Program-made: the position numbers and the translations under genes
The notes under the pieces: generated by a model
Database searches by the model: none
Seen by the model: the letters and a program-made list of their open reading frames with translations, nothing else
What the model was told of the DNA's origin: nothing
Part shown: positions 2,826 to 62,916 of the stretch, in pieces
How the letters are laid out: the number at the start of each line of letters is the position of its first letter
Position numbering within the stretch: the first letter of the stretch is position 1
Source of the DNA: Rebecca billardiae RCC1528
Taxonomy: Eukaryota > Protista > Haptophyta
Reading direction: 5' to 3'
NCBI GenBank assembly: GCA_965240325.2
Contig: OZ251234.1
Location: 2,170,001-2,234,000, forward strand
DNA length: 64,000 nt

Positions 2826-5800
2826 ATGAGCGGCACGCGCGCGCCCAAGGCGCCGAGGTGCTGGCTGGCTCTCGCCGTGCTCATCATCGTGAGCATCCTC
2901 CTCCCGTTGGCTTGTGCAGACACGAGCGGTGCTGCTCGCGCGGCGTCCGGGCCGAACCGGGCGCATGAGGCAGCGGCAAGGTGCGCGCATTGCGCGCGGC
3001 TCCGTGCTGTGCGCGTGCTGCCCTGCCCGGATGCGCGTGTGGCGTGAGGCGCGGTGTGCGTGCCAGACCAGTGCACGTACCCATGCCACGCTCGTGATGG
3101 GCTGCGTACCTCACAATGTGCCCCGCGCCCGCGCCGCTCGTTGTGCTCTGCTTCTTGTGACATGCATCGGTCCGTCATCAGCTGGTCTGACGAGGGCAAG
3201 GGTGCGCAGAGGCGCCGGCTGGCTGGTGCTCCGCCAATGATGGGTGCTCCGCCGATGATGGACGTGCCGCCGTCGCCGCCACCTTCGCCGCCGCCATCCA
3301 CTGCCGCCCCGCCGACGGGCGGTGCGCCGCCGACGACATCGACGCCGTTGCCGCCGCCCTCTCCGCCGCCATCCCCGCCGCCTTCGCCGCCGCCGTCCCC
3401 ACCGCCTTCGCCGCCGCCATCCACTGCCGCGCCGCCAACAGGCGGGGCGCCGCCGACGACATCGACACCGGTGCCGCCGCCCTCTCCGCCGCCGTCCCCT
3501 CCGCCTTCCCCGCCGCCGTCGGGCGGGTCGCCTCCTGCGTCCACGCCACCGCCGCCCAAGAGCGGGTCGCCTCCTGCGTCCACGCCACCGCCGCCGTCGG
3601 GCGGGTCGCCTCCTGCTTCCACGCCTCCGCCGCCGTCGGGCGGGTCGCCTCCTGCGTCCACGCCACCGCCGCCGTCGGGCGGGTCGCCTCCTGTGTCCAC
3701 GCCACCGCCGCCGTCGGGCGGGTCGCCTCCTGCGTCCACGCCACCGCCGCCGTCGGGCGGGTCGCCTCCTGCTTCCACGCCTCCGCCGCCGTCGGGCGGG
3801 TCGCCTCCTGCGTCCACGCCTCCGCCGCCGTCGGGCGGGTCGCCTCCTGCTTCCACGCCTCCGCCGCCCAAGAGCGGGTCGCCTCCTGCGTCCACGCCAC
3901 CGCCGCCGTCGGGCGGGTCGCCTCCTGTGTCCACGCCACCGCCGCCGTCGGGCGGGTCGCCTCCTGCGTCCACGCCTCCGCCGCCCAAGAGCGGGTCGCC
4001 TCCTGCGTCCACGCCTCCGCCGCCGTCGGGCGGGTCGCCTCCTGCGTCCACGCCTCCGCCGCCGTCGGGCGGGTCGCCTCCTGCGTCCACGCCACCGCCG
4101 CCGTCGGGCGGGTCGCCTCCTGCGTCCACGCCTCCGCCGCCCAAGAGCGGGTCGCCTCCTGCTTCCACGCCTCCGCCGCCGTCGGGCGGGTCGCCTCCTG
4201 TGTCCACGCCACCGCCGCCGTCGGGCGGGTCGCCTCCTGCGTCCACGCCTCCGCCGCCCAAGAGCGGGTCGCCTCCTGCTTCCACGCCTCCGCCGCCGTC
4301 GGGCGGGTCGCCTCCTGCGTCCACGCCTCCGCCGCCGTCGGGCGGGTCGCCTCCTGCGTCCACGCCACCGCCGCCGTCGGGCGGGTCGCCTCCTGCTTCC
4401 ACGCCTCCGCCGCCGTCGGGCGGGTCGCCTCCTGTGTCCACGCCACCGCCGCCGTCGGGCGGGTCGCCTCCTGCGTCCACGCCTCCGCCGCCCAAGAGCG
4501 GGTCGCCTCCTGCGTCCACGCCTCCGCCGCCCAAGAGCGGGTCGCCTCCTGCGTCCACGCCTCCGCCGCCGTCGGGCGGGTCGCCTCCTGCTTCCACGCC
4601 TCCGCCGCCCAAGAGCGGGTCGCCTCCTGCGTCCACGCCACCGCCGCCGTCGGGCGGGTCGCCTCCTGTGTCCACGCCACCGCCGCCGTCGGGCGGGTCG
4701 CCTCCTGCGTCCACGCCTCCGCCGCCCAAGAGCGGGTCGCCTCCTGCTTCCACGCCTCCGCCGCCGTCGGGCGGGTCGCCTCCTGCTTCCACGCCTCCGC
4801 CGCCCAAGAGCGGGTCGCCTCCTGCGTCCACGCCACCGCCGCCGTCGGGCGGGTCGCCTCCTGTGTCCACGCCACCGCCGCCGTCGGGCGGGTCGCCTCC
4901 TGCTTCCACGCCTCCGCCGCCCAAGAGCGGGTCGCCTCCTGCGTCCACGCCACCGCCGCCGTCGGGCGGGTCGCCTCCTGTGTCCACGCCACCGCCGCCG
5001 TCGGGCGGGTCGCCTCCTGCGTCCACGCCTCCGCCGCCCAAGAGCGGGTCGCCTCCTGCTTCCACGCCTCCGCCGCCGTCGGGCGGGTCGCCTCCTGCGT
5101 CCACGCCACCGCCGCCGTCGGGCGGGTCGCCTCCTGCGTCCACGCCTCCGCCGCCGTCGGGCGGGTCGCCTCCTGCTTCCACGCCTCCGCCGCCGTCGGG
5201 CGGGTCGCCTCCTGCTTCCACGCCACCGCCGCCGTCGGGCGGGTCGCCTCCTGCGTCCACGCCACCGCCGCCGTCGGGCGGGTCGCCTCCTGCGTCCACG
5301 CCTCCGCCGCCGTCGGGCGGGTCGCCTCCTGCTTCCACGCCTCCGCCGCCGTCGGGCGGGTCGCCTCCTGCGTCCACGCCTCCGCCGCCGTCGGGCGGGT
5401 CGCCTCCTGCTTCCACGCCTCCGCCGCCCAAGAGCGGGTCGCCTCCTGCGTCCACGCCACCGCCGCCGTCGGGCGGGTCGCCTCCTGTGTCCACGCCACC
5501 GCCGCCGTCGGGCGGGTCGCCTCCTGCGTCCACGCCTCCGCCGCCCAAGAGCGGGTCGCCTCCTGCTTCCACGCCTCCGCCGCCGTCGGGCGGGTCGCCT
5601 CCTGCGTCCACGCCACCGCCGCCGTCGGGCGGGTCGCCTCCTGCGTCCACGCCACCGCCGCCGTCGGGCGGGTCGCCTCCTGCTTCCACGCCTCCGCCGC
5701 CCAAGAGCGGGTCGCCTCCTGCGTCCACGCCTCCGCCGCCCAAGAGCGGGTCGCCTCCTGCTTCCACGCCACCGCCGCCGTCGGGCGGGTCGCCTCCTGC

Positions 5801-8800
5801 GTCCACGCCACCGCCGCCGTCGGGCGGGTCGCCTCCTGCGTCCACGCCTCCGCCGCCCAAGAGCGGGTCGCCTCCTGCTTCCACGCCTCCGCCGCCGTCG
5901 GGCGGGTCGCCTCCTGCGTCCACGCCACCACCGCCGTCGGGCGGGTCGCCTCCTGCTTCCACGCCACCGCCGCCGTCGGGCGGGTCGCCTCCTGCTTCCA
6001 CGCCTCCGCCGCCGTCGGGCGGGTCGCCTCCTGCGTCCACGCCACCGCCGCCGTCGGGCGGGTCGCCTCCTGCTTCCACGCCACCGCCGCCGTCGGGCGG
6101 GTCGCCTCCTGCTTCCACGCCACCGCCGCCGTCGGGCGGGTCGCCTCCTGCGTCCACGCCTCCGCCGCCGTCGGGCGGGTCGCCTCCTGCGTCCACGCCT
6201 CCGCCGCCCAAGAGCGGGTCGCCTCCTGCGTCCACGCCTCCGCCGCCGTCGGGCGGGTCGCCTCCTGCGTCCACGCCTCCGCCGCCGTCGGGCGGGTCGC
6301 CTCCTGCGTCCACGCCTCCGCCGCCGTCGGGCGGGTCGCCTCCTGCTTCCACGCCTCCGCCGCCGTCGGGCATTGCACCGCCTATTGCCCCGGAGGCAAC
6401 TCCTCCGGGGCTGCCGCCGAGCAATCCACCGCCAAGCCCATCCCCTTCGAGCCCGCCGCCGCCGAGCCCACTGCCGCCCAGCCCGCCGCCGCCCAGCCCG
6501 CCACCACCGAGCCCGCCGCCGGAGGAATCTCCGCCGCCCCCACCGCCACCCAACTCGCCGCCCCGCGCGCCTCCGCCCAGCTCACCGCCGCCGAGCCCGC
6601 CGCCTCCGAGCCCGCCGCCGCCAGCCTCGCCGCCCCCACCGCCGCCCACGCCGCCACCCAGCCCACCACCGACCCCGCCGCCGCCCAGCCCGCCGCCGCC
6701 GAGCCCGCCGCCGCCCAGCCCGCCGCCGCCGAGCCCGCCTCCGCCAGGCTCACCGCTGCCGCCGAGCAAGCCACCGCCAAGCCCATTCCCGTCGAGCCCA
6801 CCGAGCCCGCTGCCGCCGAGTCCGCCGCCGCCCAGCCCGCCGCCACCGAGCCCGCCGCCGGAGGAATCTCCGCCGCCCCCACCGCCACCCAACTCGCCGC
6901 CCCGCGCGCCGCCGCCCAGTTCACCGCCGCCGAGCCCGCCGCCGCCAAGCCCGCCGCCGCCAAGCCCGCCGCCGCCAGCCTCGCCGCCGCCACCGCCGCC
7001 CACGCCGCCGCCCAGCCCACCACCGACCCCGCCGCCGCCCAGCCCAAAACCGCCGAGCCCGCCGCCGCCGAGCCCACTGCCGCCGAGCCCGCCGCCGCCC
7101 AGCCCGCCGCCGCCGAGCCCGCCGCCGGAGGACTCCTCACCGCCCCCACCGCCACCCAACTCGCCGCCCCGCGCGCCGCCGCCCAGCTCACCGCCGCCGA
7201 GCCCGCCGCCGCCAAGCCCGCCGCCGCCAGCCTCGCCGCCGCCACCGCCGCCCACGCCGCCGCCCAGCCCACCACCGACCCCGCCGCCGCCCAGCCCAAA
7301 ACCGCCGAGCCCGCCGCCGCCGAGCCCACTGCCGCCGAGCCCGCCGCCGCCCAGCCCGCCGCCGCCGAGCCCGCCGCCGGAGGACTCCTCACCGCCCCCA
7401 CCGCCACCCAACTCGCCGCCCCGCGCGCCGCCGCCCAGCTCACCGCCGCCGAGCCCGCCGCCGCCGAGCCCGCCTCCGCCAGCCTCGCCTCCGCCACCGC
7501 CGCCCACGCCGCCGCCCAGCCCACCACCGACGCCGCCGCCGCCCAGCCCACAGCCGCCGAGCCCGCCGCCGCCGAGCCCACTGCCGCCCAGCCCGCCGCC
7601 GCCCAGCCCACCACCACCGAGCCCGCCGCCGGAGGGCTCACCGCCACCGCCACCGCCACCCAACTCGCCGCCCCGCTCGCCGCCGCCCAGCTCACCGCCG
7701 CCGAGCCCGCCGCCGCCGAGCCCGCCGCCGCCAGCCTCGCCGCCGCCACCGCCGCCCACGCCGCCGCCCAGCCCACCACCGACGCCGCCGCCGCCCAGCC
7801 CACAACCGCCGAGCCCGCCGCCGCCGAGCCCACTGCCGCCCAGCCCGCCGCCACCCAGCCCGCCGCCGCCGAGCCCGCCGCCGGAGGGCTCACCGCCGCC
7901 TCCACCGCCACCCAACTCGCCGCCCCGCTCGCCGCCGCCCAGCTCACCGCCGCCGAGCCCGCCGCCGCCGAGCCCGCCGCCGCCAGCCTCGCCGCCGCCA
8001 CCGCCGCCCACGCCGCCGCCCAGCCCACCACCGACGCCGCCGCCGCCCAGCCCACAGCCGCCGAGCCCGCCGCCGCCGAGCCCACTGCCGCCCAGCCCGC
8101 CGCCGCCCAGCCCACCACCACCGAGCCCGCCGCCGGAGGGCTCACCGCCACCGCCACCGCCACCCAACTCGCCGCCCCGCTCGCCGCCGCCCAGCTCACC
8201 GCCGCCGAGCCCGCCGCCGCCGAGCCCGCCGCCGCCAGCCTCGCCGCCGCCACCGCCGCCCACGCCACCGCCCAGGAGCCCGCCGCCGCCCAGCCCACTG
8301 CCGCCGAGCCCACCGCCGCCACCGCCGCCCGCACCGCCACCCAACCCACCACCGGCCCCGCCGCCGCCGAGCCCACTGCCGCCGAGCCCGCCGCCGCCCA
8401 GCCCGCCGCCGCCGAGCCCGCCGCCGGAGGGCTCACCGCCACCGCCACCGCCACCCAACTCGCCGCCCCGCGCGCCGCCGCCCAGCTCACCGCCGCCGAG
8501 CCCGCCGCCGCCGAGCCCGCCGCCGCCAGCCTCGCCGCCGCCACCGCCGCCCACGCCGCCGCCCAGCCCACCACCGACCCCGCCGCCGCCTAGCCCGCCA
8601 CCGCCGAGCCCACTGCCGCCACCACCACCCATGCCGCCGCCCAATCCACCACCGACCCCGCCGCCGCCGAGCCCACAGCCGCCGAGCCCGCCGCCGCCGA
8701 GCCCACTGCCGCCGAGCCCGCCGCCGCCCAGCCCGCCGCCACCGAGCCCGCCGCCGGAGGGCTCACCGCCACCGCCACCGCCACCCAACTCGCCGCCCCG

Positions 8801-11800
8801 CGCGCCGCCGCCCAGCTCACCGCCGCCGAGCCCGCCGCCGCCGAGCCCGCCGCCGCCAGCCTCGCCGCCGCCACCGCCGCCCACGCCGCCGCCCAGCCCA
8901 CCACCGACCCCGCCGCCGCCTAGCCCGCCACCGCCGAGCCCACTGCCGCCACCACCACCCATGCCGCCGCCCAATCCACCACCGACCCCGCCGCCGCCGA
9001 GCCCACAGCCGCCGAGCCCGCCGCCGCCGAGCCCACTGCCGCCGAGCCCGCCGCCGCCCAGCCCGCCGCCACCGAGCCCGCCGCCGGAGGGCTCGCCGCC
9101 ACCGCCACCGCCACCCAACTCGCCGCCCCGCGCGCCGCCGCCCAGCTCACCGCCGCCGAGCCCGCCGCCGCCGAGCCCGCCGCCGCCAGCCTCGCCGCCG
9201 CCACCGCCGCCCACGCCGCCGCCCAGCCCACCACCGACCCCGCCGCCGCCTAGCCCGCCACCGCCGAGCCCACTGCCGCCACCACCACCCATGCCGCCGC
9301 CCAATCCACCACCGACCCCGCCGCCGCCGAGCCCACAGCCGCCGAGCCCGCCGCCGCCGAGCCCACTGCCGCCGAGCCCGCCGCCGCCCAGCCCGCCGCC
9401 ACCGAGCCCGCCGCCGGAGGGCTCGCCGCCACCGCCACCGCCACCCAACTCACCGCCCCGCGCGCCGCCGCCCAGCTCACCGCCGCCGAGCTCGCCGCCG
9501 CCGAGCCCGCCGCCGCCAGCCTCGCCGCCGCCGAGCTCGCCACCGCCGCCGCCCCCGAGCCCGCCGCCAAGCCCGCCGCCATCAAGCTCACCGCCGCCGC
9601 CGCCGCCGCCCACACCGCCGCCCAGCCCGCCGCCGAGCCCACTGCCGCCGAGCCCGCCGCCTCCCAGCCCACCACCGCCGAGCCCGCCGCCGCCGAGCTT
9701 GCCGCCGCCAAGCTCGCCACCGCCACCGCTCCCGAGCCCGCCGCCGAGCCCGCCGCCAGCAAGTCCACCGCCGCCACCGCCACCTGCGCCGCCGCCCAGC
9801 CCGCCACCGAGCCCGCCGCCTCCCAGCCCGCCGCCTCCCAGCCCGCCGCCGCCGAGCCCACTGCCGCCGAGCCCCCCGCCGCCGAGCTCGCCACCGCCGC
9901 CGCCCCCGAGCCCGCCGCCACGCCCGCCACCGCGCCCGCCGCCGCCCCCGCCGCCAAGCCCGCCGCCAAGCCCGCCACCGCGCCCGCCGCCGCCCCCGCC
10001 GCCAAGCCCGCCGCCAAGCCCGCCGCCGCCGAGCTCGCCTCCCCCGCCGCCTCCGCCCGCCCCGCCCCCGAGCCCGCCGCCGCCGCCTCGCACCGAGCCG
10101 CTGCCGCCGCCGAGCCCGCCGAGCCCGCCGCCGAGCCCGCCGCCACCCAGCCCTCCGCCGCCGCCGCCACCGTCGAAGCCGCCCTCCCCGCCACCGAGCC
10201 CGCCGCCACCAAGCCCTCCCCCACCGAGCCCGCCGCCGCCGAGCCCGCCGCCGCCCAGCCTGCCGCCGCCGAGCTCGCCGCCGCCGCCGCCGCCAACACC
10301 GCCACCGAGCCCGCCGCCAAGCCCACCGCCGCCACCACCGCCCAGCCCACCGCCCTCGCCGCCACCCTTGCCACCGCCGTCGCTGCCACCGCCGCCGCCG
10401 CCGTCGCCGCCTCCTTCGCCGCCGCCGCCCTACCCGCCGCCACCCTCGCCACCGCCTTCGCCGCCGCCGCCGCCGCCGCCGTCGCCGCCTCCTTCGCCGC
10501 CGCCGCCCTACCCGCCGCCCCCCTCGCCGCCCCCGCCAAGCCCGCCGCCCTTGCCGCAGCCGACGCCCCCGCCCACGCCGCCTCCAAGCCTGCCGCCACC
10601 GTCCTCGCCACCGCCGCCACCGCCGAGCCCCCCACCCTCGCCCCCGCCACGGCCGCCGCCGCCGCCTCCGAGCCCGCCGCCGAGCCCGCCGCCGAGCCCG
10701 CCGCCGCCGAACTCGCCACCGCCGCCGCCTCCGAACCCGCCGCCGAGCCCGCCGCCGTCATCGCCGCCGGCCCCCCCGCCGTCGTCACCGCCGTCGCCGC
10801 CGCCGAGCCCGCCGCCGTCGCCACCGCCGTCGCCACCGCCGAGCCCGCCGCCGAGCCCGCCGCCCTCGCCACCGCCCTCGCCACCGCCGAGCTCACCGCC
10901 TCCACCGCCTCCGGCGCCGCCCCCGAGTCCGCCGCCGCCGCCGCGCACCGAGCCCTTCCCACCTCCGAGCCCGCCGAGTTCGCCGCCCCCTCCGCCACCG
11001 CCGAGCCCGCCGCCCTCGCCACCGCCGCCGCCGCCGCCATCGGCGCCGCCCTCGCCGCCGAGCCCGCCGCCGCCGCCGCCGCCGACGCCACCACCGAGCC
11101 CACCCCCACCGAGTCCGCCGCCACCCAGCCCGCCGCCGCCAAGCCCGCCGCCGCCGAGGCCGCCGCCGCCGAGCTCGCCGCCGCCGCCACCGCCGACGCC
11201 ACCGCCGAGCCCGCCTCCGAGCCCGCCGCCGCCACCGCCGCCGAACCCGCCGCCGAGCCCACCTCCCTCGCAGCCGCCGTCGCCGCCGCCAAGCCAGCCG
11301 CCGCCGCCGCCACCGTCGCCGCCGCCGAGCCCGCCGCCGCCGCCCCCGCCGACGCCGCCGCCGAGCCCGCCTCCGAGCTCGCCGCCGCCACCGCCACCGA
11401 ACCCGCCGCCGAGCCCACCTCCGGCGCAGCCGCCGTCGCCGCCGCCAAGCCAGCCGCCGCCGCCACCACCGTCGCCGCCGCCGAGCCCGCCCCCGCCGCC
11501 ACCGCCGACGCCACCGCCGAGCCCGCCTCCGAGCCCGCCGCCGCCACCGCCACCGAACCCGCCGCCGAGCCCACCTCCGGCGCAGCCGCCGTCGCCGCCG
11601 CCAAGCCAGCCGCCGCCGCCGCCACCGTCGCCGCCGCCGAGCCCGCCGCCGCCGCCGCCACCGTTGCCTCCGCCTTCGCCTCCGCCGAGTCCGCCGCCGC
11701 TGCCGCCACCGTCGCCGCCGCCGAGCCCGCCGCCGCCGCCACCGCCGACGCCACTGCCGAGCCCGCCTCCGAGCCCGCCGCCGCCACCGCCACCGAACCC

Positions 11801-14488: not shown

Positions 14489-14521
<33 letters not shown>

Positions 14522-14817
14522 CCGCCCAGCCCGCCGCCCAGCCCGCCGCCGCCGAGCCCGCCGCCTCCGCCGCCGCCCAGCCCGCCGCCGAGCCCGCCGC
14601 CCGGCCCGCCGCCCTCGCCGCCGCCCTCGCCGCCGCCGCTGCCGCCGCCGTCGCCTCCGCCGAGCCCGCCGCCGTCGCCGCCGCCCTCGCCGCCGCCGCC
14701 CTCGCCGCCGCCGAGCCCGCCGCCCTCTCCGCCGCCGAGCCCGCCGCCCTCGCCGCCGCCGCCCTCGCCGCCGCCCGCGCCGCCGCCCGCGCCGCCGCCG
14801 AGCCCGCCGCCCTCGCC

Positions 14818-14851
<34 letters not shown>

Positions 14852-17800: not shown

Positions 17801-20800
17801 CTCTGCTACCGCTTCGGCTCGGAGCCGTGGGCGCACTACCCGGCCGTCGGGCTGCGCGTGCACGCGCTCTACTCGTACGCGGGCGGCGGCCGCGCGGTCG
17901 TGGGCGGCGCCAAGGGCGTGACGTTCGACGGGTTCGGCGTGAGCGGCGCGGACCGCGCGTACTGGGTGCCCGCGGGCACGCCCGCGTGCGCGTCGCAGCC
18001 CTCGCTCGTGCAGTGGGGCGGCACGCAGCCCGTGTCCGCCGGCGGCCTCGGCGCGTCGTTCACCTTCCTGCGCGGCACGGGCGCGCTCGGGTACGCGCTC
18101 TGCTACGCGTTCGGCGCCGAGCCGTTCGCGCTGTACGCCAACCTGACGCTGGACGTGCTGCAGATCTCGGGGCCGGCCGTGGTGCTCGCGGTGGTCACCG
18201 TCGAGGAGTCGATCACCTTCCAGGGCGTCGGCCTCGGCGAGGGCGACGAGGCGTACTTTGTGCCGATGGGCGCGGGCGCGGCCGGCTGCGCCGAGGCGAA
18301 CCGGATCTCGGGCGACGCGAACGCGCTGATCAGCGGCGGCGTGGGCGCGTTCACGTTCCCCGCGGTGGCGACGGGCCACCGGCTGTGCTACCGCTTCGGC
18401 CCCGCCTCCGAGGGCCTGCCCTGGCGCCAGTTCTCCGCGACCACCCTCTCGGTCACGCTGCCCGACGACCCGTTCGCGCTCGCCGCCTTCAGCGGGCTCG
18501 CGCCCACCGCCGCGCCGATCGGCGTCGCGTACGGCGCGACCAGCGTGACCGTGTTCGGCTCGGGCTTCGAGCTGGGCGCGCAGAGCAAGGCGGGCATCAT
18601 CTACTGCGTCTTCGGCGACGGCGCCACCGAGGTGCGCGTCCGCGTCGACGCGATCACGCCGACGGCGATCAACTGCACCGCGCCCGCGCTCGACGCGGCC
18701 GGCGTGGCCGCGCTCTCGCTCGTCGCGGACGAGACCGACGCCTCGAGCGGAGAGCCGCGCGAGCCGGTGGCGATCACGAACGACTTCACGTTCTTCGAGA
18801 TGGGCTCGGTGCGCGTGGCCGAGCTCGCGCCGCCCGGCGCGCCGCAGGGCACGCAGGGCGCGACGCTCGCCGTGCGCGGCGCCAACTTCTCCGACCACGG
18901 CGGGCTGGCGTGCGCGTTTGTGGGCGACAACTTTGAGGGCGGGCGCGTCGAGGTGGCGGCGACGCTGCCCGACGCGGGCACGGCGGAGCTGCTCTGCGCC
19001 GCGCCGTACGTCTCGCCCACCGTCGCGCCGGGCGACATCGCCGTCGAGGTCTCGCTCAACGGCCAGGCCTTCACCGACGACGGCGCGCAGTTCACGCTGT
19101 ACACGGCGCTCGTCTCCGCGGCCGAGCCGAGCGGCGCGCCCGTCGGCGGCGCCGACCCCGCGCTCACGCTCTACGGCTCGGGCTTCGTCGACCTCGGCGC
19201 GACGACGTGCTCGTTCGCGCCCGCGGCGGGCGGCGCGGCGGTGCAGGTGGCCGGCGAGGTGCGCGACGCGACCACCGCCACGTGCGCCTCGCCCGGCGCC
19301 GCCGCCCCCGCCGGCTCGTACGTCGTCTCGCTCTCGCTCAACGGCGGCGTGCACGCGGTGTCCGTCCTCTTTGACGCGATCGGCTTCGAGCTGTACGACA
19401 TGGCGGACGTGGCGGTGACGAGGCTGGTGCCGCCGGGCGGGCCGGTGGCGGGCGGCACGCGCGTCACCGTGTTCGGCACCGGCTTCGACGAGTACGGCGA
19501 CGGCGCGACCGACCGCGCCCGCCGGCTGTGCTGCGTGCTCGGCGCCGCGGGCGCGTGCACGGCGCGCGCGACGCTGCTCGGCGCCGCGGCCGACGGCTCG
19601 TCGCGCGCGCTGTGCACGGTGCCGCCGGCGGGGCTCGCGGGCAACGTGACGCTCGACATCTCGCTGAACAACGGCACGCTCGCCTCCACCACCGACTCCG
19701 CCGTCCGCTTCGTGTACCACGACGAGCCGACGCTGCTGAGCGTCAGCCCGGCCGTCGGCGACGCGATCGGCGGCACGACCGTCACGCTCGTGGGCTCGGG
19801 CTTTGCCGCGCTCGCCGACTCGGGCGTCGAGTACGGCGCGGACCCGGCGTCGTTCCTGCGCGTGCGCTTCGGCCCGACGACCGCCGCGGCGCCGCTCTCG
19901 TTCAACGACACGCACATCGTGCAGCTGTCCAGCTGGGGCGCGGAGGGCGGCGCGGCCGTGCGCGTGAGCCTCAACGGGCGGCAGTACGCGCCCGCGGACG
20001 GCGCGGCCGCGCCCGCCTTCACCTTCAGCGGGCTGCACGCGCCCGAGCTCTCGCAGGCGCTCTTCAGCGACGAGGGCACCGCGCTCAAGGTCGTGCTCGA
20101 CGGGCAGGACACGAACCGCGGCGGCATGGTCGGGCTCGGCGGCTGCTCCGCCGTGCTCGACGACGCGACCGTCTCGCTCATCCAGGGCGACGCGGGCGCC
20201 GAGCCACTCTGCTTCTGGCAAGACGACTCGACGATCGTCGCGCAGCTCAACGCGCTCACGGCGCTGCGGCCGGGCGACAGCGTCGCGCTGCGGGCCGACG
20301 TGATCACGCCGCGGCTGTACACGGGCGCGTGCCCCGGCACGCGCGGGCTGTGCGCGTCGGGCGCCGCCGAGATCGACGCCGACTTCCCGTGCGCCTCGTG
20401 CCCCACGCCCGTCGCGGACATCTCCGGCCCGAGCCAGATCTCGCAGTGCCCGAACGAGGTGCTGCGCCTCGACGGCACCGCGTCGTCCGGCGGCGGCGCC
20501 GTGCCGCTCACGTACACGTGGCGCGTGGACCCGAGCCGCTCGGACTTTGCGGACGCGATCAACGCGCAGCTCGCGACGCAGACCGGCCCGGTCGTCGAGC
20601 TCAGCGCGCTGCAGGGCGACAGCTACGTCTTCCTGCTGCGCGTCTCGTCCTTCCTCGGCGTGCAGAGCGCGCTCGTCGAGTGGCCCGTCTCGCGCGGCGG
20701 CGGCGCGTCGCCCTCGCTCGCCATCGACGGCCCGAGCGTGCAGCTCGCGCGGCCGTCGGAGGCGCTGCTGCTGCAGGGCGTCGCGACGCTCGCCGACTGC

Positions 20801-23800
20801 TGGCCCGTGGCGCAGGCCTCCGACATCGTCTTCTCGTGGAGCTACCTCGGCTCGAGCGTGAGCGCGAGCGGCGCGGCCGCGGCGCTCGCGCTGCCGCTCG
20901 ACGAGCCGGACAAGTCCGGGCTGCTCATCCCCGCGTTCACGCTGCTCTCGGGCTACTCGTACGAGCTGCAGCTCGACGCGTACATGCTCGCCGAGCCGAG
21001 CGCGGCGACGAGCGCGACCGTCACGGTGTCCGTCGAGGCGCAGGCGCTGCAGGTCATCGTCGCGGGCAGCGACCGGCAGAGCGCGGCGGACGCGGCCGTC
21101 TCGATCGACGCGTCCAGCTCGTACGACCCCAACGTGCCCACGCTCGAGGCCAAGTCGAGCCTCGCGTTCGCGTGGGAGCTCGCGCTCGACGCGAACGGCA
21201 CGGCGGGCGAGCCGGTCTCGCTCGACCCCGGCCTCGGCGTCGACCTCGGCGCGTCGGTGCTCAGCCTGCCGCCGGGCGCGCTCGAGGCGGGCGCGTACGT
21301 CGTGACGGTGCGCGTGTCCGCGCCCGACCTCGCGCCCGCGTCGGCGTCGCTCGCGCTCGACGTGATCGCCGCGGCCGACGTGCCGATCATCACGTTCGAG
21401 CCGCTCACCAAGGTGAAGTACAACCCGACGTGGGACCTGCCCACCGAGCGCGTCACCCTCGTCGCGAGCGTCGCCGGCCGCGGGCGGTACAGCTTTGGGT
21501 GGCGCGCGTTTGTGGACGTGGGCGGGCAGCGCAGCGCCGCCGACCTCGACCTCGGCGACGGCGCGGTGACGACGACGGGCGACGACAAGCGCACGCTCGC
21601 GTTCCGCAGCGGCGTGCTCACGCCGGGCGCGCTGTACAGCTTCCAGCTCACCGTCAGCGGCGGCTCGGTCGACGCGCTCGGCTCGGTGCAGGTGCAGATG
21701 AACCGGCCGCCGTACGGCGGCGCGCTCACCGTGCAGCCCGCGTCGGGCGGGCGCGCGCTCGAGACGCTCTTCACGCTGCAGGCGCTGGGCTGGACCGACG
21801 ACGTGGCCGACCAGCCGCTCGAGTACGCGTTCTCGCACACGTTCGACGCGGACGGCGCGGCCGCGCGCTCCAAGGCGCTCTCGGAGCGCGTGCGCTCGCC
21901 CACGCTCCTCGACACGTACCTGCCCGAGGGCGGCCTCACGCTGCGCGTGCGTGTCTTCGACTACTACGGCTCGGCGGTCGACGCGACGGTGGGCACGACG
22001 GTGCTCGCGCCGTCCTCCGTGGACTGCGCCGCGCTGATCGCGCAGGCCGAGGCGGAGGTCGCGACGGGCAACATTGCGCGCTCGATGCAGCTGCTCGCCG
22101 CGCTCTCCAGCGACGGCAGCTGCGTGGCGCAGGACGCGCGCGGCCGCCGGCTCGGCGCCGCGCCGCGGCCGCGGCCGCGCCGCCGCGCGCTGCAGGACGG
22201 CGGCGGCGCGGGCGCGAACGCGACGAACGGCAGCGCCGCCGCCCTCTCGTGCGACGGCGCCGCCGGCTCGACCGTCGAGGAGATGCTCGACATCGTGGGC
22301 AGCGCGGGCAACGCCTCCGTCTCGACCGCCGCGAGCCGCACGCAGCTGGCGGGCGCGGTCGCAGACATCCTGCTCAGCGCCAACGCGTCCGAGCTGAGCG
22401 CGTGCGCGCAGCTCGACGCGCTCTCGCTCACGCTCGGGCTCGTGCTCGACTCGGCCGCCTCGGGCGTCGACGAGGACGCCGCCACCTCGCTCTTCGCCGC
22501 GCTGCTCGCCGTGCTCGGCGCCAACGTGACGCGCCTCGAGCCGGCCGTGGCCGCGGCGATCAACGCGCTCGCGACCGAGACCGCGGCCGGCCTGGCGCTC
22601 GCCTTCCTGACGGGCAAGGTGGCGGACGAGGAGTACGCGCAGATCAGCGGCGCCGGGCTCAGCCTCTCGGCGGGGCGCTCGTCCGACGTCGCCAACTCGA
22701 CCATCGCCGCGCCCGGCGGCGTGGGCGGCCTCGCCGTGCCGCTGGGCGCGCTCGACGGCCTGCCCAACGCGTCGGTGGTGGACGTGGTGCAGTTCCTGTA
22801 CGCGCGCAACACGAACGGCGACCCGACGGCGCAGCCCGGGCTGGGCGAGCTGCAGACGCCGGTGTACTCGGTCACCTTCGCCTCCGCGTCCACCGGCGCG
22901 CAGCTCGCCGTCGCCGGCCTCGACGAGCCCATCGTGATCGCGATCCCGCTCAGCGCGTCGCACGAGCTGCAGTACGGCGCGTCGGGCGTGTGCGCCGAGT
23001 TTGGCGGCTGCAACGGCCGCGGCGCGTGCGTGCTCGAGCCGCACAACGCGAGCGCGCTCGGCGTCGACCCGAACGCGAGCGCGCCCGGCGGCGCGTGCGC
23101 GTGCGACGCGCCGTGGTACGGCCCGAGCTGCCTGCAGCGCGCGCTGTGCCACTTCTGGGACGTGGCGGAGGGCGCGTGGTCGACCGACGGCTGCGAGACC
23201 GTGCCCACGCCGCCGGGCGGCGACAACGGCACGCTGTACTGCGCGTGCACGCACCTCACCGACTTTGGCGGCGTCTCCGTCACGACGCCCCCCGACGAGC
23301 CGGACGGCGGCGGCGGCGGCGGCGGCGGCCGCGGCCGCGGCCGCGGCGGCGGCGGCGGCGGCGGCGGCTCGTCCGGCCCCGCCGCGGCGTCCGTGCGGCC
23401 GGCGTCGCTCGGGCCGAACCCGGCCGTGCTCGGGCTGGTGCTCGGCACGGTGGGGTGCGCGCTGCTGCTCGCCGCGCTCGGCGCGGCGAAGGACTGGGCG
23501 GACGGCCGGCGCGAGGCGACCAAGGTCGCCGTCGACGCGGACGCGGACGCGGCGCGCGGCGGCGGCGGCGCGGCCGCGGGCGGCGCGCTCGCGCTCGCGC
23601 TGCGCGCGCTCCGCGCCGCGCTCGCGTCCGAGCACACGCTGCTCGGCCTCGCGCTGGGGACGGACGCGCACGTGCGCCGGCCGGCGCGCGCGGCCACGCT
23701 CGGCGTGCTGCTCAGCCTCGAGATCGCGATCTGCTGCGCGCTGCTCGCGCCGGCGGGCGCCTCCGACGCGCCGGCGCCGCTCGGCGCCTCGGCCGTGGCG

Positions 23801-24636
23801 GCCGTCGGCTTTCTGGCGGCCGGGCTGAGCGCGCCGGCGCTGCTGGCGCTCAAGGGGCTGTGGCGCTGGGCGCACAAGGGGCCGCCGCCCGCGCTGCTGC
23901 GCGCGCTCGCGCGCGCCGCGGCGGGCGGCGTGCGCGCGCGCCGCCGCGCCATGCTCGCCTCGGAGGCGGGCGTGAGCGCGCTCGGCGCCGCGCCGCGCTC
24001 GCGGCCGGCCGCAGACCGCGTGCGGCCGACCGCGGCCGCGCCGCGCCCGCCGCCGCCGCCGCCGACGGCCGGCGCGGACGGCGTGGACGGCGTGTCGCGC
24101 CCGTCGCCGCAGGACGCGTCGCCGCCGCCCTCGCCCGCGCGCCCCTCGCCGCCGCGCTCGGTCGGCGCCGACTCGGACATCGAGCAGATCTCGCTCTCGC
24201 CGCCGCGGCAGCCGTCAGCGCTGCCCTCGCCGCCGGGGCGCGCGCCGCCGGGCGGCGCGGCGCCCTTCGTCGGCGCCGACGGCTCGTCGCCGCCCTCGCC
24301 GGCCGGCGTGCGCGTCGTGCGCGCGCAGCGCGAGTCGGGCGACGCGCTCGCGCGCCGAGGCAGCGAGTCGGCCGCCGCTGGCGGCGGCGGCGGCGGCGGC
24401 GCCTCCTCCGGCGCCGCGGCTGTGATCACGCCCGACGCGTCGCCGGCGCGACGGCTGGCTCAGCCGAGCCGCGCGGGCGCGCGCGCGGGCTGGCAGGACG
24501 GCGGCTCGCCGCTGCCGCCCGCGTCGCCCGCCAAGCCGAGCACGCCGGGCGACGCGGAGGAGGGCGCCGGCGCGGCCTCGGACTGGGCGCGCGAGCGCAC
24601 GCGCACCTCCTCGCCGCAGGAGCCGAGCGAGCCCAC

Positions 24637-24672
<36 letters not shown>

Positions 24673-25631
24673 GTCCGCCGGCGCGTCCGCCGCCGGCGCG
24701 GCGGCGGACGCCTCGCTCGACTCGCTGCCGGCCTCGCAGCGCGAGCGCGTGCTCGGCATCGCCGACGCGTCTCGCGAGCGCGCGGCCGCCGCGGCCGCGC
24801 ACGGCTCGCGCTCGCACGCGCTGGGCGGGCGCGAGCTGCGCGCCCTCTGGCGCGCCTTTGACGCGCGCGGCCGCGGCGGCGCGCCGGGCGAGCTGGCCGC
24901 GTCCGAGCTGGGCGCGCTGATGGCGAGCCTCGGCATGCAGCTCTCCGCCGAGCAGGCGCAGACGTGCGCGCGCGCCCTCGCGCCCGCGCGCCAGTGCGCC
25001 CGCGCGCCGCCCTCGCCGCCGCGCGCTCAGCCGCCCGCCCGCCTGTGCCCATGCTGCCGTGCACGCGTGTGTGCGCGCGCGTGTGCGCGCGTGTGCGCGT
25101 GTGTGTGCGCGTGCGCGCGCGTGTGTGTGCGCAGGCTGCGCGCCCGGCTGGACACGCGCGGCACCGGCAGTGTCGAGTTCGCAGCGTGGCTCGAGTGGTA
25201 CGCCGAGCGCATGGCGGTGAGCGCGCACGCGCACGCGGCCCACGCCGCGCGCGCCGCGAGCGGCTGCCGGAGCGTGCGCACTCGCTCACACGCCGTGCGC
25301 TCACACGGCCGCCCGCCCGCTGCCGCTGCGCCCGCTGCCGCTGCGCCCGCTGCCGCTGCGCCAGGCGTTCGAGGAGGCGGAGGCGGAGCGCGAGGCGCAC
25401 CGCCCCTCGCCGCCACCGCGCGCTGCCCGGCTGCTCCTCGCGTGGGCGCTCTCGCTCGCCGCCCTCGGCGTGTGCGCGTGGGCGGCCGTCAGCGTGGGCG
25501 GCGCGTTTGGGGCCGCGCGCTTCGACGCGCTGTGCGCCGCGTGGGCCGTGGCGCTCTGCCAGACGTTTGTCGTGATCGAGCCCGTCCTGATCGGAGTGGG
25601 CGTGCTCGTGCCCATCCTCTTCCTCCACTGA
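2826..25631 (+). CDS. Giant polycystin-1/REJ-like cell-surface protein (~7,391 aa). Exons 2826-2980, 3182-12496, 12607-24963, 25135-25216, 25365-25631
   Basis: ATG 2826 gives a signal peptide (CWLALAVLIIVSILLPLACA). Four GT-AG introns (2981-3181, 12497-12606, 24964-25134, 25217-25364) are phase-compatible and give a 22,176-nt ORF. Domains read from the translation: Pro/Ser repeats; LRRs; IPT/TIG (PPGGPVAGGTRVTVFGTGF); REJ-like (SIDASSSYDP, NRPPYGGALTVQPASGGRALETLFTL...GWTDD..PLEYAF); GPS (CHFWD..WSTDGC..YCACTHLTDF); TM helices; an EF-hand pair; final TMs ending FVVIEPVL. Confidence 0.8.
3519..6370 (+). repeat. Coding minisatellite, 39-bp unit (SGGSPPASTPPPP / KSGSPPASTPPPP), ~73 copies
   Basis: Unit TCGGGCGGGTCGCCTCCTGCGTCCACGCCACCGCCGCCG repeats with few variants; span 2,852 bp / 39 = ~73. 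Confidence 0.95.
6400..12083 (+). repeat. Extensin-like Ser-Pro(3-4) coding region with higher-order repeats (e.g. 330-bp units near 8590/8920/9250)
   Basis: SPPP/SPPPP runs with recurring EGSPPPPPPPNSPPRAPPPSS blocks; identical CCTAGCCC landmarks are exactly 330 bp apart. Confidence 0.9.
12130..13350 (+). other. Plant-type leucine-rich repeat domain (~15-16 x 24 aa) of the giant protein, split by intron 12497-12606
   Basis: Repeating LxxLxLxxNSLxGxIPTEVG consensus; 15 PTE/PTQ motifs; Cys-containing caps (YWYSDC..VC; LMCGG..LPAC). Confidence 0.9.
14900..18460 (+). repeat. 12 tandem ~100-aa Cys-containing beta-rich repeats (GD.A.W...C...L.LCY.F..EP..LY)
   Basis: LCY/LCF motifs near 15125, 15440, 15725, 16030, 16325, 16610, 16920, 17205, 17515, 17800, 18100 and 18385, spaced ~290-310 bp. 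Confidence 0.85.
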
Positions 25632-26149
25632 GCCCGATGCACGCCGCGCGGCGCGCGTGTACACTACTACTGCTACGGCGTGTATACATCGTCCGCCGGC
25701 TGATGACTCAGCGTCAGCAGCCGCCGCGCGCGATGCATGCCGGCTGCGTGCATCATCGTCATGCTCTGATGGCGAGCCGCGCCAGCGAGCGCGCTAGCTA
25801 ATATGCTGTGTATATATATATATATATATATCGTAGTCGTACGTCCGGCCGGTGGATTTGCAGTTGGCGGCACACCTGTCTCTCCCTAAGCCAGCATCAC
25901 TACCAGCCAACTTCTTTATAGCACTCGCTTAGAGCCCATCGTCAGCATCATACGAATGTACCCCCAGCGCATATGCCGCGCCGAAAAAGACTGCTTGATG
26001 ATGATGACTTTTTGATGAGCTAAGCGTGATGCTGAAAATCATCACGACTGCACAAAAAAAACTAGCAGCCAAAGAATAATAAACCTTCGGCCAACCGCCG
26101 TCTCGCCGCGCGCGAGATGCTTGGCACGCGGGCGCGACCACCCTCGATC

Positions 26150-26572
26150 GATGGCGGCGACGACGCGCGCGCGCGCGCCACGGCGCGCTGCTCGGCAGCG
26201 GCGGCCGTGCGGCTGGCCGACGTGCCACCCGAGCTCGTCGCGCTCATCGGAATTCGGATCGATCCGAGGCCTCGCTCTCTTGGGGGCGCGATGGGGTTGC
26301 TCACGACGAAGGCGCCGAGCTGAGCCGAGGGGGATCGCCTGCAAGTCCGGGGCACTGCCGGGTGCACTCTCCGCTTGGCAGGAGCAGTGCACCGCAGTCG
26401 CCGCAGCCCCTCTGCTCGTTAAGGTCGCTGGCTGTCTGTGTGGCCCGGCTCCCCGCCGGATCGTTCGGCGGCGCGACGACATGATGATCTGTCCTCGGCC
26501 GCGTCGCCCCTCATGCAATAATGGCCTCTACTGCTTGCTCTCGCCGCTGTCACGTCAACCCGCACGCTTCAT
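26150..26572 (-). mobile_element. Diverged inverted copy of the internal part of the 48262-49820 element family
   Basis: CGTCAACCCGCACGCTTCAT, GGTCGCTGGCTGTCTGTGTGGCCCGGCTCCCCGCC and GCTCACGACGAAGGCGCCGAGCTG are reverse complements of sequence at ~48488-48760. Confidence 0.8.
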
Positions 26573-31101: not shown

Positions 31102-31430
31102 GGTTGCGGGTATGGGTATGAGTGGGGCGCGCGGGTGTCCTCCCGTCAAGAACTCCTGTCCTGTGCGCAGTCTGGGGCGCTGGCTGCATCTTGGTGGGGC
31201 AAGAGTCCGGGAACTGGCCGAGCCCGAGAGCGATCGCCCGGACTCCGCTTGGGGCGGCCGCGCACCTGTTCAGCCGCGCCCCGTGCGAGGTGCTCGCGAG
31301 CTCGGCTGTCGCCTGTCCTTGGCCTGTCGTCGGCAGCTGCTCTGACCAGGAGTTCACTCGGGCCGCCGGCCACTCGGCCACCGAGCAGCAGCGCAGCAGC
31401 AGCAGCGGCGCCAGTGCAGCTGGTGCGGCG

Positions 31431-32636: not shown

Positions 32637-32680
<44 letters not shown>

Positions 32681-61300: not shown

Positions 61301-61567
61301 CGCCGCCGCCCAGCCCGCCGCCACCCAGCCCACCGCCGCCGAGTCCGCCGCCACCCAGCCCGCCGCCGCCGAGCTCGCCGCCACCGCCTCCGCCGTCGCC
61401 GCCGCCCAGCCCACCTCCGAGCCCGCCGCCGCCGAGCCCGCCGCCACCGAGCCCTCCACCGCCCAGCCCGCCGCCGCCGAGCTCGCCGCCGCCGCCGCCG
61501 CCCTCGCCGCCGCCGAGCCCGCCGCCGAGCCCGCCGCCGAGCCCACCGCCGCCGAGCCCACCGCCGC

Positions 61568-61599
<32 letters not shown>

Positions 61600-62370: not shown

Positions 62371-62403
<33 letters not shown>

Positions 62404-62541
62404 CCACCCACGCCGCCCCCCAGCCCGCCGCCGAGCCCGCCGCCGCCAAGCCCACCGCCGCCGAGCCCGCCGCCGCCGAGCCCGCCGCCGCCGAGCTCGC
62501 CGCCGCCGCCGCCACCGAGCCCGCCGCCGAGCCCGCCGCCG

Positions 62542-62573
<32 letters not shown>

Positions 62574-62712: not shown

Positions 62713-62745
<33 letters not shown>

Positions 62746-62884: not shown

Positions 62885-62916
<32 letters not shown>

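What the first reader, a model, noticed from the sequence alone, without database searches (positions are those of the whole stretch)
2826..25631. ~7,400-aa polycystin-1-like receptor with an extensin stalk and plant-type LRRs, truncated after TM5 and carrying EF-hands
Seen in sequence: a single spliceable ORF with signal peptide, ~2,950 aa of Pro/Ser repeats, ~16 LRRs, a second Pro stalk, 12 Cys repeats, 5 IPT/TIG, REJ, GAIN/GPS, TM1-3, a long loop with an EF-hand pair, and two last TMs ending FVVIEPVL. Established: polycystin-1 has REJ-GAIN-TM1-PLAT-TM2-5 followed by a 6-TM TRP-like unit. Here PLAT is not recognisable and the channel unit is absent. Inference: a channel-less, Ca2+-responsive adhesion or mechanosensory receptor that combines polycystin and LRR-extensin/agglutinin-like designs, possibly on a flagellum or haptonema.
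Basis: partly seen in the sequence, partly recalled or inferred. Interest (0 to 1): 0.8.

Follow-up and report, generated by a model that had tools for sequence, protein, structure and literature searches.

The report
Giant stalked polycystin-1-like surface receptor
A very GC-rich Pavlova-like alga encodes a 7,391-residue surface protein (micron-long proline rods, a leucine-rich-repeat module and twelve Ig-like domains on the self-cleaving, channel-less front half of a polycystin-1-type receptor); it is one of about 100 such genes in this genome, and its calcium-sensing motifs are decayed.

Summary
ATG 2826 to TGA 25631 with four GT-AG introns gives 7,391 codons with no internal stop. Confirmed parts:
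- Signal peptide, a 2,953-aa Pro/Ser rod, 15-16 plant-type 24-aa LRRs, and a 501-aa second rod.
- Twelve two-Cys repeats (AlphaFold: Ig-like sandwich, pLDDT 92) and TIG domains.
- REJ (E 1.5e-38), GPS (CACTHL/TDF) and five hydrophobic helices.

- The gene is not a truncated oddity. The genome holds at least 95 REJ loci, and every relative examined lacks PLAT and a channel half and stops after TM5.
- A paralogue's base, folded, has polycystin-1 TM1-5 as its best match among 48,161 solved chains (Z 13.8).
- Relatives exist in Diacronema lutheri, annotated only as hypothetical proteins.
- The "EF-hands" here are decayed. Paralogues carry two canonical loops plus an IQ motif. This gene and its sister on C23 lack the IQ, the Ca2+ ligands and the C-terminal tail, and their membrane base has diverged far faster than the ectodomain.
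- The LRR cassette, intron included, is 97-98.5% identical to that of a paralogue whose REJ region is only 50% identical, so heads are exchanged.

The scan met this family before on other DNA of this genome. No RNA evidence could be obtained.

The parts
2826..2980 (+). Exon 1: start codon and signal peptide (hydrophobic core WLALAVLIIVSILLPLA)
   Evidence: hydropathy maximum 2.73. Donor AG|GTGCGC at 2981.
2981..3181 (+). Intron 1 (201 nt, GT..CAG; contains an in-frame stop)
3225..12083 (+). Rod 1: 2,953 aa, 63% Pro and 19% Ser. It holds 73 copies of GSPP[AV]STPPPP (39-nt period, 3510-6371), then Ser-Pro3-4 extensin-like repeats with 156/252-nt super-periods.
12084..13393 (+). LRR cassette with Cys caps at both ends and 15-16 repeats of 24 aa (NSLxGxIPTExGxLxSLxxLxLxx), interrupted by intron 2
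   Evidence: Pfam LRR_14, LRR_1 and LRR_8. 24-aa spacing. 97-98.5% DNA identity to the C27 paralogue and 91-92% to the C1 tandem array.
12497..12606 (+). Intron 2 (110 nt; AT|GTGCGT ... GCGCAG|G)
13394..14896 (+). Rod 2: 501 aa, 74% Pro (36-nt period)
14897..18457 (+). Twelve ~97-aa two-Cys repeats, predicted to be Ig-like beta-sandwiches
   Evidence: Alignment A1 has two invariant Cys. AlphaFold pLDDT 92. The best solved matches are only generic Ig-like folds. At least 150 copies lie in about 20 paralogues.
18458..20023 (+). IPT/TIG domains (four pass on their own; there is room for five)
   Evidence: Pfam TIG E 9.6e-29.
20405..20650 (+). Weak PKD-type Ig domain ahead of REJ
   Evidence: K319L-like_PKD E 3.1e-5 and PKD_4 E 2.7e-4. 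KIAA0319L in the PDB, E 0.0067.
20924..22025 (+). REJ domain
   Evidence: PF02010 E 1.5e-38, profile positions 44-415 of 452.
22026..23281 (+). GAIN-like region ending in the GPS motif CACTHL|TDF. The predicted cleavage lies between 23257 and 23258.
   Evidence: PF01825 E 9.3e-8. Weak matches to adhesion-GPCR GAIN chains. The motif is the same in all 29 related loci read.
23408..23494 (+). TM1. It is preceded by a Gly/Arg low-complexity stretch where paralogues have a conserved stalk.
23582..23944 (+). TM2-TM3 module (SEHTLLGL ... PALLALKGLWRW). It keeps the family's invariant R, H, L, R, P, R columns.
   Evidence: Alignment A2. Own-genome hits. 166 database relatives. Hydropathy.
23945..24826 (+). 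Low-complexity cytosolic loop (Pro/Ala/Gly/Ser-rich)
   Evidence: no Pfam match.
24827..24963 (+). Degenerate EF-hand 1 (loop RGGAPGELAASE: ligand positions 1, 3, 5 lost, Glu12 kept)
   Evidence: no Pfam hit at E<=1.
24964..25134 (+). Intron 3 (171 nt, in frame, AC|GTGCGC ... GCGCAG|G)
25135..25216 (+). Exon 4: degenerate EF-hand 2 (loop DTRGTGSVEFAA: Arg at position 3, Ala at position 12)
25217..25364 (+). Intron 4 (148 nt, GTGAGC ... GCCAG)
   Evidence: Paralogues read into an intron at the same position.
25365..25631 (+). Exon 5: TM4 (25419-25517), TM5 with the family E-P motif (25521-25628) and stop TGA. The conserved ~35-aa tail of paralogues is missing.

Best explanation
This is one member of a haptophyte (Pavlovales) family of about 100 giant modular surface proteins that share one membrane base.

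Shown:
- The base consists of REJ, a GAIN/GPS self-cleavage module and a five-helix core. It has no PLAT domain and no channel half.
- A paralogue's base, when folded, resembles TM1-5 of polycystin-1.
- On this base the gene carries, from the membrane outward: TIG domains, twelve Ig-like domains, a 501-aa proline rod, a plant-type LRR cassette and a 2,953-aa headless proline/serine rod.

Inferred:
- The rods add up to about 1.07 micrometres if they adopt a polyproline-II helix.
- The protein is a glycosylated, hair-like adhesion or recognition filament. Its LRR joint binds a ligand or neighbouring filaments.
- Pull on the filament is passed to the GAIN module, which is held together non-covalently after cleavage at HL|T.
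- In many paralogues the cytosolic side reads this out through an IQ motif in the TM1-TM2 loop and an EF-hand pair in the TM3-TM4 loop.
- In this gene and its C23 sister that read-out has decayed: there is no IQ, no Ca2+ ligands and no C-terminal tail. This member therefore most likely acts as a Ca2+-independent anchor or adhesin, or signals only together with intact paralogues.

Also shown: head cassettes move between paralogues by recent DNA exchange.
For: Domains: Pfam.

Gene model.

Family size and shared ending:
- At least 103 REJ matches at about 95 loci.
- 55 loci match the last exon.
- All loci read carry CxCxHLTDF, and most stop 52-54 aa after the E-P motif.

No PLAT and no channel.

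Base fold: AlphaFold of the paralogue in L037 gave pLDDT 85-95 over the helices. Its best match among 48,161 chains was polycystin-1 8z6b_A, residues 3063-3610: Z 13.8, 193 residues aligned.

EF-hand and IQ state:
- Paralogues have two PROSITE-type loops and an IQ motif.
- The EF pair of L022 matches calmodulin at E 5e-11.
- This gene's loops are degenerate, and its TM1-TM2 loop is about 47 aa with no IQ.
- No tail exon was found.

Uneven divergence: the ectodomain is 77% identical to the C23 and C19 sisters. The TM2-3 module is only 41-45% identical, while the C19 and C17 copies keep 68%.

Cassette exchange.

Relatives outside this genome: Diacronema lutheri KAG8462819.1 and KAG8459354.1, and a Chrysochromulina parva cluster, all unnamed. 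They carry REJ, GPS and EF-hand but never PLAT or PKD_channel.
Against:
- The polycystin-1 fold match rests on a paralogue, not on this gene. Z 13.8 is in the range that helical bundles can reach by chance according to the tool's own note.
- Foldseek did not find polycystin-1.
- Sequence and profile searches of the PDB did not find it either.
- Loss of Ca2+ binding is inferred from loop residues only.
- Adhesion, glycosylation, cleavage and force transmission are inferences from known families.
- dN/dS of 0.6-0.8 is uninformative at GC3 0.99.
Confidence: 0.6

Rival explanations
1. The gene is a decaying copy. After duplication its membrane and cytosolic base came under relaxed constraint, so the protein is non-functional or not made. 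The long frame stays open only because 80% GC leaves few stop codons.
For: - Other frames and the antisense strand also hold frames of 2,500-3,200 aa.
- The base is 41-45% identical to the sisters against 77% for the ectodomain.
- The IQ motif, the EF ligands and the tail are lost.
- A Gly/Arg low-complexity stretch replaces the conserved post-GPS stalk.
- dN/dS is 0.6-0.8.
Against: - 7,391 codons cross four canonical splice sites without a stop.
- GC3 is 0.99 against GC2 0.58 in the correct frame.
- All six invariant columns of the TM2-3 module are kept.
- The GPS motif is intact.
- The LRR cassette was renewed recently.
- The C23 sister shows the same reduced design, which suggests a maintained variant.
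Confidence: 0.2
2. One reading: a Ca2+-responsive mechanosensor that works with separately encoded PKD2-like channels.
For: - The genome has 39 PKD_channel matches.
- Paralogues have canonical EF-hand pairs and IQ motifs.
- The base resembles polycystin-1 TM1-5.
Against: - Both EF loops of this gene lack key ligands, and the IQ is absent.
- By established knowledge of the PKD1-PKD2 complex, polycystin-1 joins the channel through its TM6-11 half and its C-terminal coiled coil. Neither exists here.
- No channel gene lies beside any REJ locus.
Confidence: 0.12
3. The stretch holds two or more separate genes, for example a secreted rod-plus-LRR protein and a separate receptor.
For: - No RNA evidence is available.
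- LRR cassettes also occur in a tandem array without a REJ domain on C1.
Against: - The first frame would end inside an LRR, and the second has no start codon or signal peptide.
- The splice restores the exact 24-aa period.
- The C27 paralogue is collinear over rod, LRR with intron, and rod 2.
Confidence: 0.05

Closest known systems
Polycystin-1 / REJ family (human PKD1, PKDREJ; sea urchin SpREJ1-10)
   Same: - A REJ domain followed by a GPS cleavage motif and membrane helices, with Ig-like (PKD/TIG) and LRR modules upstream.
- A paralogue's five-helix core superposes best on PKD1 residues 3063-3610.
- SpREJ proteins have 1-11 TM segments, so members without a channel half are known (PMC1934368).
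   Different: - There is no PLAT domain between TM1 and TM2, no TM6-11 or TOP half and no coiled-coil tail.
- The family instead has an IQ motif and an EF-hand pair, both decayed in this gene.
- It carries micron-scale proline rods.
- The family has about 100 members in one genome, against 5 in humans and 10 in sea urchins.
Ectocarpus Esi0130_0068 (REJ + GPS + 6-7 TM, male-gamete specific)
   Same: An algal REJ-GPS membrane protein on a flagellate cell, proposed to be a recognition receptor (PMC4700764).
   Different: It has 1,427 aa, no rods, LRR or Ig arrays, and a reported channel-like hit. It comes from a stramenopile, not a haptophyte, and no direct comparison was run here.
Plant LRR-extensins (LRX) and Chlamydomonas sexual agglutinins (hydroxyproline-rich fibrous shafts)
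   Same: Ser-Pro3-5 rods combined with a plant-type 24-aa LRR module, and a fibrous surface glycoprotein design. This comparison rests on my own knowledge of these families; the sequence features are.
   Different: Those proteins are secreted or wall-bound and have no REJ/GAIN/TM anchor. Here the LRR sits between two rods, and the protein is an integral membrane protein.
Adhesion GPCRs
   Same: A GAIN/GPS autoproteolysis module at the base of a long adhesive ectodomain, with weak GAIN matches to ADGRE5 and ADGRG3. Such a module offers a possible tethered-peptide or force-sensing mechanism.
   Different: There are five helices rather than seven, and no 7TM family hit.
Unnamed Diacronema lutheri proteins KAG8462819.1 and KAG8459354.1 ('hypothetical' / 'EF-hand domain-containing protein')
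   Same: They share the TM2-3 module (E 2e-34 and 3e-27 for their clusters) and the REJ, TIG and EF-hand_7 content. They are the true family of this gene.
   Different: They keep canonical EF-hand pairs. The annotated models are shorter (2,088 and 3,751 aa), and no function has been described.

Membership tests
PKD1/REJ family (broad sense, defined by the REJ domain; PMC1934368) | REJ domain | tested here: met
   PF02010 E 1.5e-38, 133 bits against a cut-off of 25.
PKD1/REJ family | GPS motif just before TM1 | tested here: met
   PF01825 E 9.3e-8. The motif is CACTHLTDF, and TM1 follows 59 residues later.
Polycystin-1 proper | PLAT domain between TM1 and TM2 | tested here: not met
   The loop has about 47 residues and no Pfam hit. 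PF01477 has only two loci in the genome, neither near a REJ gene.
Polycystin-1 proper | TM6-11 channel-like half with a TOP/polycystin domain | tested here: not met
   No PF08016 match in the window. The frame stops 13 residues after the E-P motif of TM5, and no downstream exon was found.
Polycystin-1 proper | Fold of the TM1-5 N-terminal membrane domain | tested here: inconclusive
   Tested on the paralogue in L037 only. The best of 48,161 chains was 8z6b_A residues 3063-3610 (Z 13.8, rmsd 4.6, 193 aligned). This is within the chance range for helical bundles, and neither Foldseek nor sequence profiles found it.
Haptophyte REJ-GAIN-5TM family (unnamed) | TM2-3 signature (xHxLLGx ... PAL ... 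WGY) and the TM4-5 exon with the E-P motif | tested here: met
   The invariant columns R8, H18, L21, R33, P85 and R107 of A2 include the window row. There are 23 and 55 own-genome matches and 166 database relatives.
Haptophyte REJ-GAIN-5TM family (unnamed) | IQ motif in the TM1-TM2 loop (present in about half of the members read) | tested here: not met
   No IQ or IQ-like string is present. L018-L020 keep an IQ-like motif, and L022-26, L031-32, L037 and L039-42 a canonical one.
EF-hand Ca2+-binding pair | 12-residue loops with ligands at positions 1, 3, 5 and 12 (PROSITE PS00018) | tested here: not met
   Loop 1 is R-G-G-A-P-G-E-L-A-A-S-E and loop 2 is D-T-R-G-T-G-S-V-E-F-A-A. There is no PS00018 match and no Pfam hit exon by exon. 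The helices and spacing are homologous to the canonical pairs of paralogues. The joined pair was not scanned.
Plant-specific-type LRR | 24-residue repeat LxxLxLxxNxLxGxIPxxLGxL with Cys-pair caps | tested here: met
   LRR_14 E 3e-17, LRR_1 and LRR_8. Fifteen motifs at 24-aa spacing. Cys pairs are visible at both ends.
Extensin-like hydroxyproline-rich glycoprotein | Ser-Pro3-5 repeats; hydroxylation and arabinosylation | not testable with these tools
   The sequence part is met: 233 SPPP and 131 SPPPP motifs in rod 1. The modifications cannot be tested.
Adhesion GPCR | Seven-helix domain after GAIN | tested here: not met
   Five hydrophobic segments and no 7TM Pfam hit.

The most novel reading that the evidence does not exclude
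The roughly 100 giant genes form a cassette-swapping repertoire of surface receptors. A conserved polycystin-1-like self-cleaving base carries interchangeable heads (LRR, Ig-like arrays and, according to the scan's other notes, propellers and lectins). These heads are moved between paralogues by recent gene conversion, as shown here by an LRR cassette that is 98% identical, intron included, on bases that are only 50% identical. The result would be a diversified recognition system for mates, prey, bacteria or viruses in a unicellular alga. Some members, like this one, would have shed the Ca2+/IQ read-out and serve as pure anchors or decoys.
Probability: 0.3. Interest if true: 0.8.

Novelty: new variant of a known kind. 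Interest (0 to 1): 0.58.

Why it matters
- Polycystin-1 is a major human disease protein. What its N-terminal five-helix domain does apart from the channel half is still unclear.
- Here that half occurs naturally on its own, about a hundred times in one genome, wired either to an IQ/EF-hand module or, as in this gene, to nothing recognisable. This offers natural separation-of-function variants.
- For algal biology, roughly 3% of a 72-Mb genome may encode micron-long surface filaments whose role is unknown. They may serve as coat, flagellar hairs, or adhesion and recognition structures.
- The recent exchange of an LRR cassette between distant paralogues gives a concrete, testable case of domain shuffling in a protist receptor family.

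Tried and rejected
- Sequence search of the PDB with the window's REJ-to-TM3 part found no polycystin-1, only weak GAIN and KIAA0319L matches.
- A profile of the TM2-3 module against the PDB gave nothing significant.
- Foldseek on the base model found only calmodulin-like lobes.
- Foldseek on the two-Cys repeat found no match at E<=0.001, only generic Ig-like folds.
- The word-based protein search with a paralogue's C-terminal module found nothing. With the window's REJ-TM region it found one unnamed Logan protein.
- The ESM Atlas feature search on TM1-3 gave no score of 0.9 or above.
- A search for a missing C-terminal tail exon in 25.4-32 kb matched only TM5 itself.
- dN/dS between paralogues was 0.61-0.84. 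I judged it uninformative because GC3 is about 0.99.
- Literature: no paper links REJ or polycystin to haptophytes. The Diacronema lutheri genome paper does not mention the family.
- Rejected: 'truncated polycystin-1' as a description, because the ending is family-wide.
- Rejected: reading the long antisense and off-frame ORFs as genes. They are a by-product of GC content.
- The joined (spliced) protein was never sent to any search or fold. All searches used single exons or intron-free paralogues by reference. The join was made only inside a local script, to count length, stops and motif spacing.

Full report
**What is there**

The window is G000:C17:2170001-2234000 of a 72-Mb, 41-contig genome. 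Local GC content is 70-88%. Two giant plus-strand frames, 3054-12662 and 12497-25801, cover the finding.

Reading the DNA at the frame breaks gives four GT-AG introns:
- Intron 1, 2981-3181.
- Intron 2, 12497-12606.
- Intron 3, 24964-25134.
- Intron 4, 25217-25364.
- The start codon is at 2826 and the stop (TGA) at 25629-31.

A local script counted the joined model only. It has 22,176 nt, 7,391 codons and no internal stop. The joined protein was never sent to a search or a fold. Every search used single exons or intron-free paralogues by reference.

The splice model has indirect support:
- Fifteen xPTExG motifs keep an exact 24-aa spacing across intron 2.
- Intron 3 is 171 nt. That is exactly what is needed to restore the 36-residue spacing of the two EF loops seen in paralogues without an intron there.
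- Paralogues run into a GT at the position of intron 4.
- In a related cassette array the intron 2 stretch is 85% identical while the flanking exons are 92-97% identical.
- The coding frame shows GC3 0.99 against GC2 0.58.

**Domains, from the N-terminus**
- A signal peptide.
- Rod 1: 2,953 aa, 63% Pro and 19% Ser. It starts with 73 copies of a 13-aa unit and continues as Ser-Pro3-4 repeats.
- A Cys-capped LRR module of 15-16 plant-type 24-aa repeats: LRR_14 E 3e-17, LRR_1 and LRR_8.
- Rod 2: 501 aa.
- Twelve ~97-aa two-Cys repeats with no Pfam match. AlphaFold, using the repeats as its alignment, gives a confident beta-sandwich with pLDDT 92. Its solved-structure matches are only generic Ig-like folds.
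- TIG domains, E 9.6e-29.
- A weak PKD-type domain.
- REJ, E 1.5e-38.
- GPS, E 9.3e-8, with the cleavage motif CACTHL|TDF.
- Three hydrophobic helices.
- A ~330-aa low-complexity loop.
- Two EF-hand-like helix-loop-helix units split by intron 3.
- After intron 4, two more helices ending ...FVVIEPVLIGVGVLVPILFLH-stop.

If the two rods adopt a polyproline-II helix (about 0.31 nm per residue; my inference) they span about 0.9 and 0.15 micrometres. The LRR module lies between the rods, not at the tip.

**It is a family, not an oddity**

A six-frame search of the whole genome with the REJ model gives at least 103 matches at about 95 loci. They lie in open frames of up to 21,132 aa. One locus is a tandem neighbour whose signal peptide and rod begin at about 55,330 in this window.
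- The last exon (TM4-5) matches 55 loci.
- The TM1-3 unit matches 23 loci.
- In the 29 related loci that I fetched, all carry CxCxHLTDF.
- Those with a continuous frame stop 52-54 residues after a conserved E-P motif in TM5.
- PKD_channel has 39 matches in the genome, but none in the window and none beside a REJ locus.
- PLAT has two loci, both elsewhere.

'Truncated after TM5' thus describes the normal design of the family.

**Is the base polycystin-1-like?**

By the published definition, the REJ domain places a protein in the PKD1/REJ family, whose sea urchin members have 1-11 TM segments (PMC1934368).

Sequence methods do not link the helices to polycystin-1. I therefore folded the base of an intron-free paralogue (L037, from GPS to stop, 816 aa) with an alignment of 21 natural relatives. 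The helices and the EF pair reach pLDDT 85-95, and the loops are disordered.
- Foldseek found only calmodulin-like lobes.
- The exhaustive aligner ranked the polycystin-1 chain of the PC1/PC2 complex first of 48,161 chains.
- That match is 8z6b_A, Z 13.8, rmsd 4.6, with 193 residues aligned. It covers chain residues 3063-3610, the TM1-TM5 region and not the channel half.
- The tool warns that helical bundles can reach such Z values by chance.
- I take this as supportive, not conclusive, and it was obtained on a paralogue.

**The calcium module and its decay here**
- About half of the paralogues read have an IQ motif in the TM1-TM2 loop, where polycystin-1 has PLAT. An example is MQKYARGRKAR.
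- Those paralogues also have two PROSITE-type EF loops in the TM3-TM4 loop.
- One such EF pair matches calmodulin at E 5e-11.
- With the N-terminus outside the cell, both loops are cytosolic.
- In this gene loop 1 reads R-G-G-A-P-G-E-L-A-A-S-E, so positions 1, 3 and 5 are lost.
- Loop 2 reads D-T-R-G-T-G-S-V-E-F-A-A, with Arg at position 3 and Ala at the bidentate position 12.
- Pfam gives no EF hit on either exon.
- The TM1-TM2 loop is cut down to about 47 residues with no IQ, whereas its relatives L018-L020 keep an IQ-like string.
- The conserved ~35-aa C-terminal tail (…GGATGEAINELLATTV…) is missing, and no exon for it lies within 6 kb downstream.
- The closest paralogue (C23, L017) shows the same reductions.

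Identities tell the same story:

| Pair | TIG-REJ-GAIN ectodomain | TM2-3 module |
|---|---|---|
| This gene vs C23 copy (L017) | 77% | 45% |
| This gene vs C19 copy (L018) | 77% | 41% |
| C19 copy (L018) vs C17 neighbour (L019) | 52% | 68% |

The base of this gene and of its C23 sister has evolved much faster than the rest. 'Ca2+-responsive' is therefore not supported for this member. dN/dS of 0.6-0.8 cannot separate relaxed from diversifying selection, because GC3 near 0.99 depresses dS.

**Head exchange**
- The LRR module has 96% protein identity to the C27 paralogue.
- It has 93-95% protein identity to about ten tandem cassettes at C1:2693133-2708341.
- At DNA level, window 12100-13342 is 97.4-98.5% identical to C27, and the intron itself is 98.1% identical.
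- The C1 units are 91-92% identical over 12008-13491.
- The C27 gene is nonetheless only 50% identical over TIG-REJ-GAIN.
- The 77%-identical sisters C23 and C19 show no such LRR match.

The gene is thus a mosaic. Its front resembles C27 and its back resembles C19 and C23. Recent gene conversion or cassette transfer is the simplest explanation.

**Relatives elsewhere**

An exhaustive HMM search with the TM2-3 profile found 166 proteins at E<=0.001 among 1.84 billion representatives. I scanned eighteen of them with Pfam.
- The closer hits carry REJ, GPS and an EF-hand pair.
- The more distant hits carry GPS only.
- None carries PLAT or PKD_channel.
- The named members are Diacronema lutheri hypothetical proteins.
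- One distant cluster includes Chrysochromulina parva.
- This fits a Pavlovales-like source. D. lutheri itself has 43.5 Mb and 73% GC (PMC8379373).
- I found no paper describing the family.
- An algal REJ-GPS protein specific to male gametes is known in Ectocarpus (PMC4700764).

**Earlier notes of this scan**

The scan has met this family many times on other DNA of the same genome, including members with IQ and EF-hand motifs. I reached the family size, the IQ/EF module and the Pavlovales link from my own searches, and they agree with those notes.

Specific to this report are the worked-out intron model, the decayed Ca2+/IQ/tail module shared with the C23 sister, the uneven divergence of base and ectodomain, and the near-identical LRR cassette shared with C27 and the C1 array.

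**Verdict**

The most likely function is a glycosylated, hair-like adhesion or recognition filament anchored by a self-cleaving, channel-less polycystin-1-like base that in this member no longer senses Ca2+.

Shown:
- The domain content.
- The family context.
- The absence of PLAT and of a channel half.
- The degenerate EF loops.
- The cassette identity.

Inferred:
- The rod geometry.
- Glycosylation.
- GPS cleavage.
- Force transmission.
- The surface location.

Noticed in passing
window 55330-64000 and beyond (G000:C17:2225330-2250390): A tandem neighbour of the same family on the same strand. It has a signal-peptide-like start at about 55330, then a Pro/Ser rod (75% Pro) that runs off the window. 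Its Ig-like repeats, REJ (C17:2243861), TM1-3 and TM4-5 follow outside the window. Its ectodomain is 96% identical to the C27 paralogue, but no LRR match was seen for it.
   Followed up: partly
L047 (G000:C1:2692000-2701999; array extends to about C1:2708341): About ten head-to-tail copies (period about 1.43 kb) of the same LRR cassette, including its intron. They are 91-92% identical to window 12008-13491, and no REJ locus lies nearby. This may be a multi-LRR rod protein or a reservoir of cassettes.
   Followed up: partly
window 2552-23875, minus strand and other frames: Open frames of 2,500-3,200 aa on the antisense strand and in off-frames across the gene. They translate to Arg/Ala/Gly-rich nonsense and are a by-product of 80% GC, not genes.
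   Followed up: partly
window 30938-36596: A stretch of GC 0.88 with long open frames on both strands that are 45-48% alanine. I did not work out what it encodes, if anything.
   Followed up: no
window 26570-28620: The 3' flank of the gene drops to GC 0.66 and holds two near-identical repeat units (similar ORFs at 26621-27445 and 27952-28551). It marks the end of the gene.
   Followed up: no
L027 (Logan SRR30664515 contig, 9,839 bp; protein P0001): A genomic contig from another, related organism encodes two-Cys repeats, TIG, REJ, GPS, an IQ motif and a canonical EF pair. It is 41% identical to the window gene and reads into an intron at the same position after EF-hand 2.
   Followed up: partly
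window 23282-23410: Directly after the GPS motif, a Gly/Arg low-complexity run (GGGGGGGGRGRGRGGGGGGGG) replaces the conserved stalk that paralogues have between GPS and TM1 (VPTSPEE...FNTF...NP). If that stalk acts as a tethered peptide, it is altered here.
   Followed up: no
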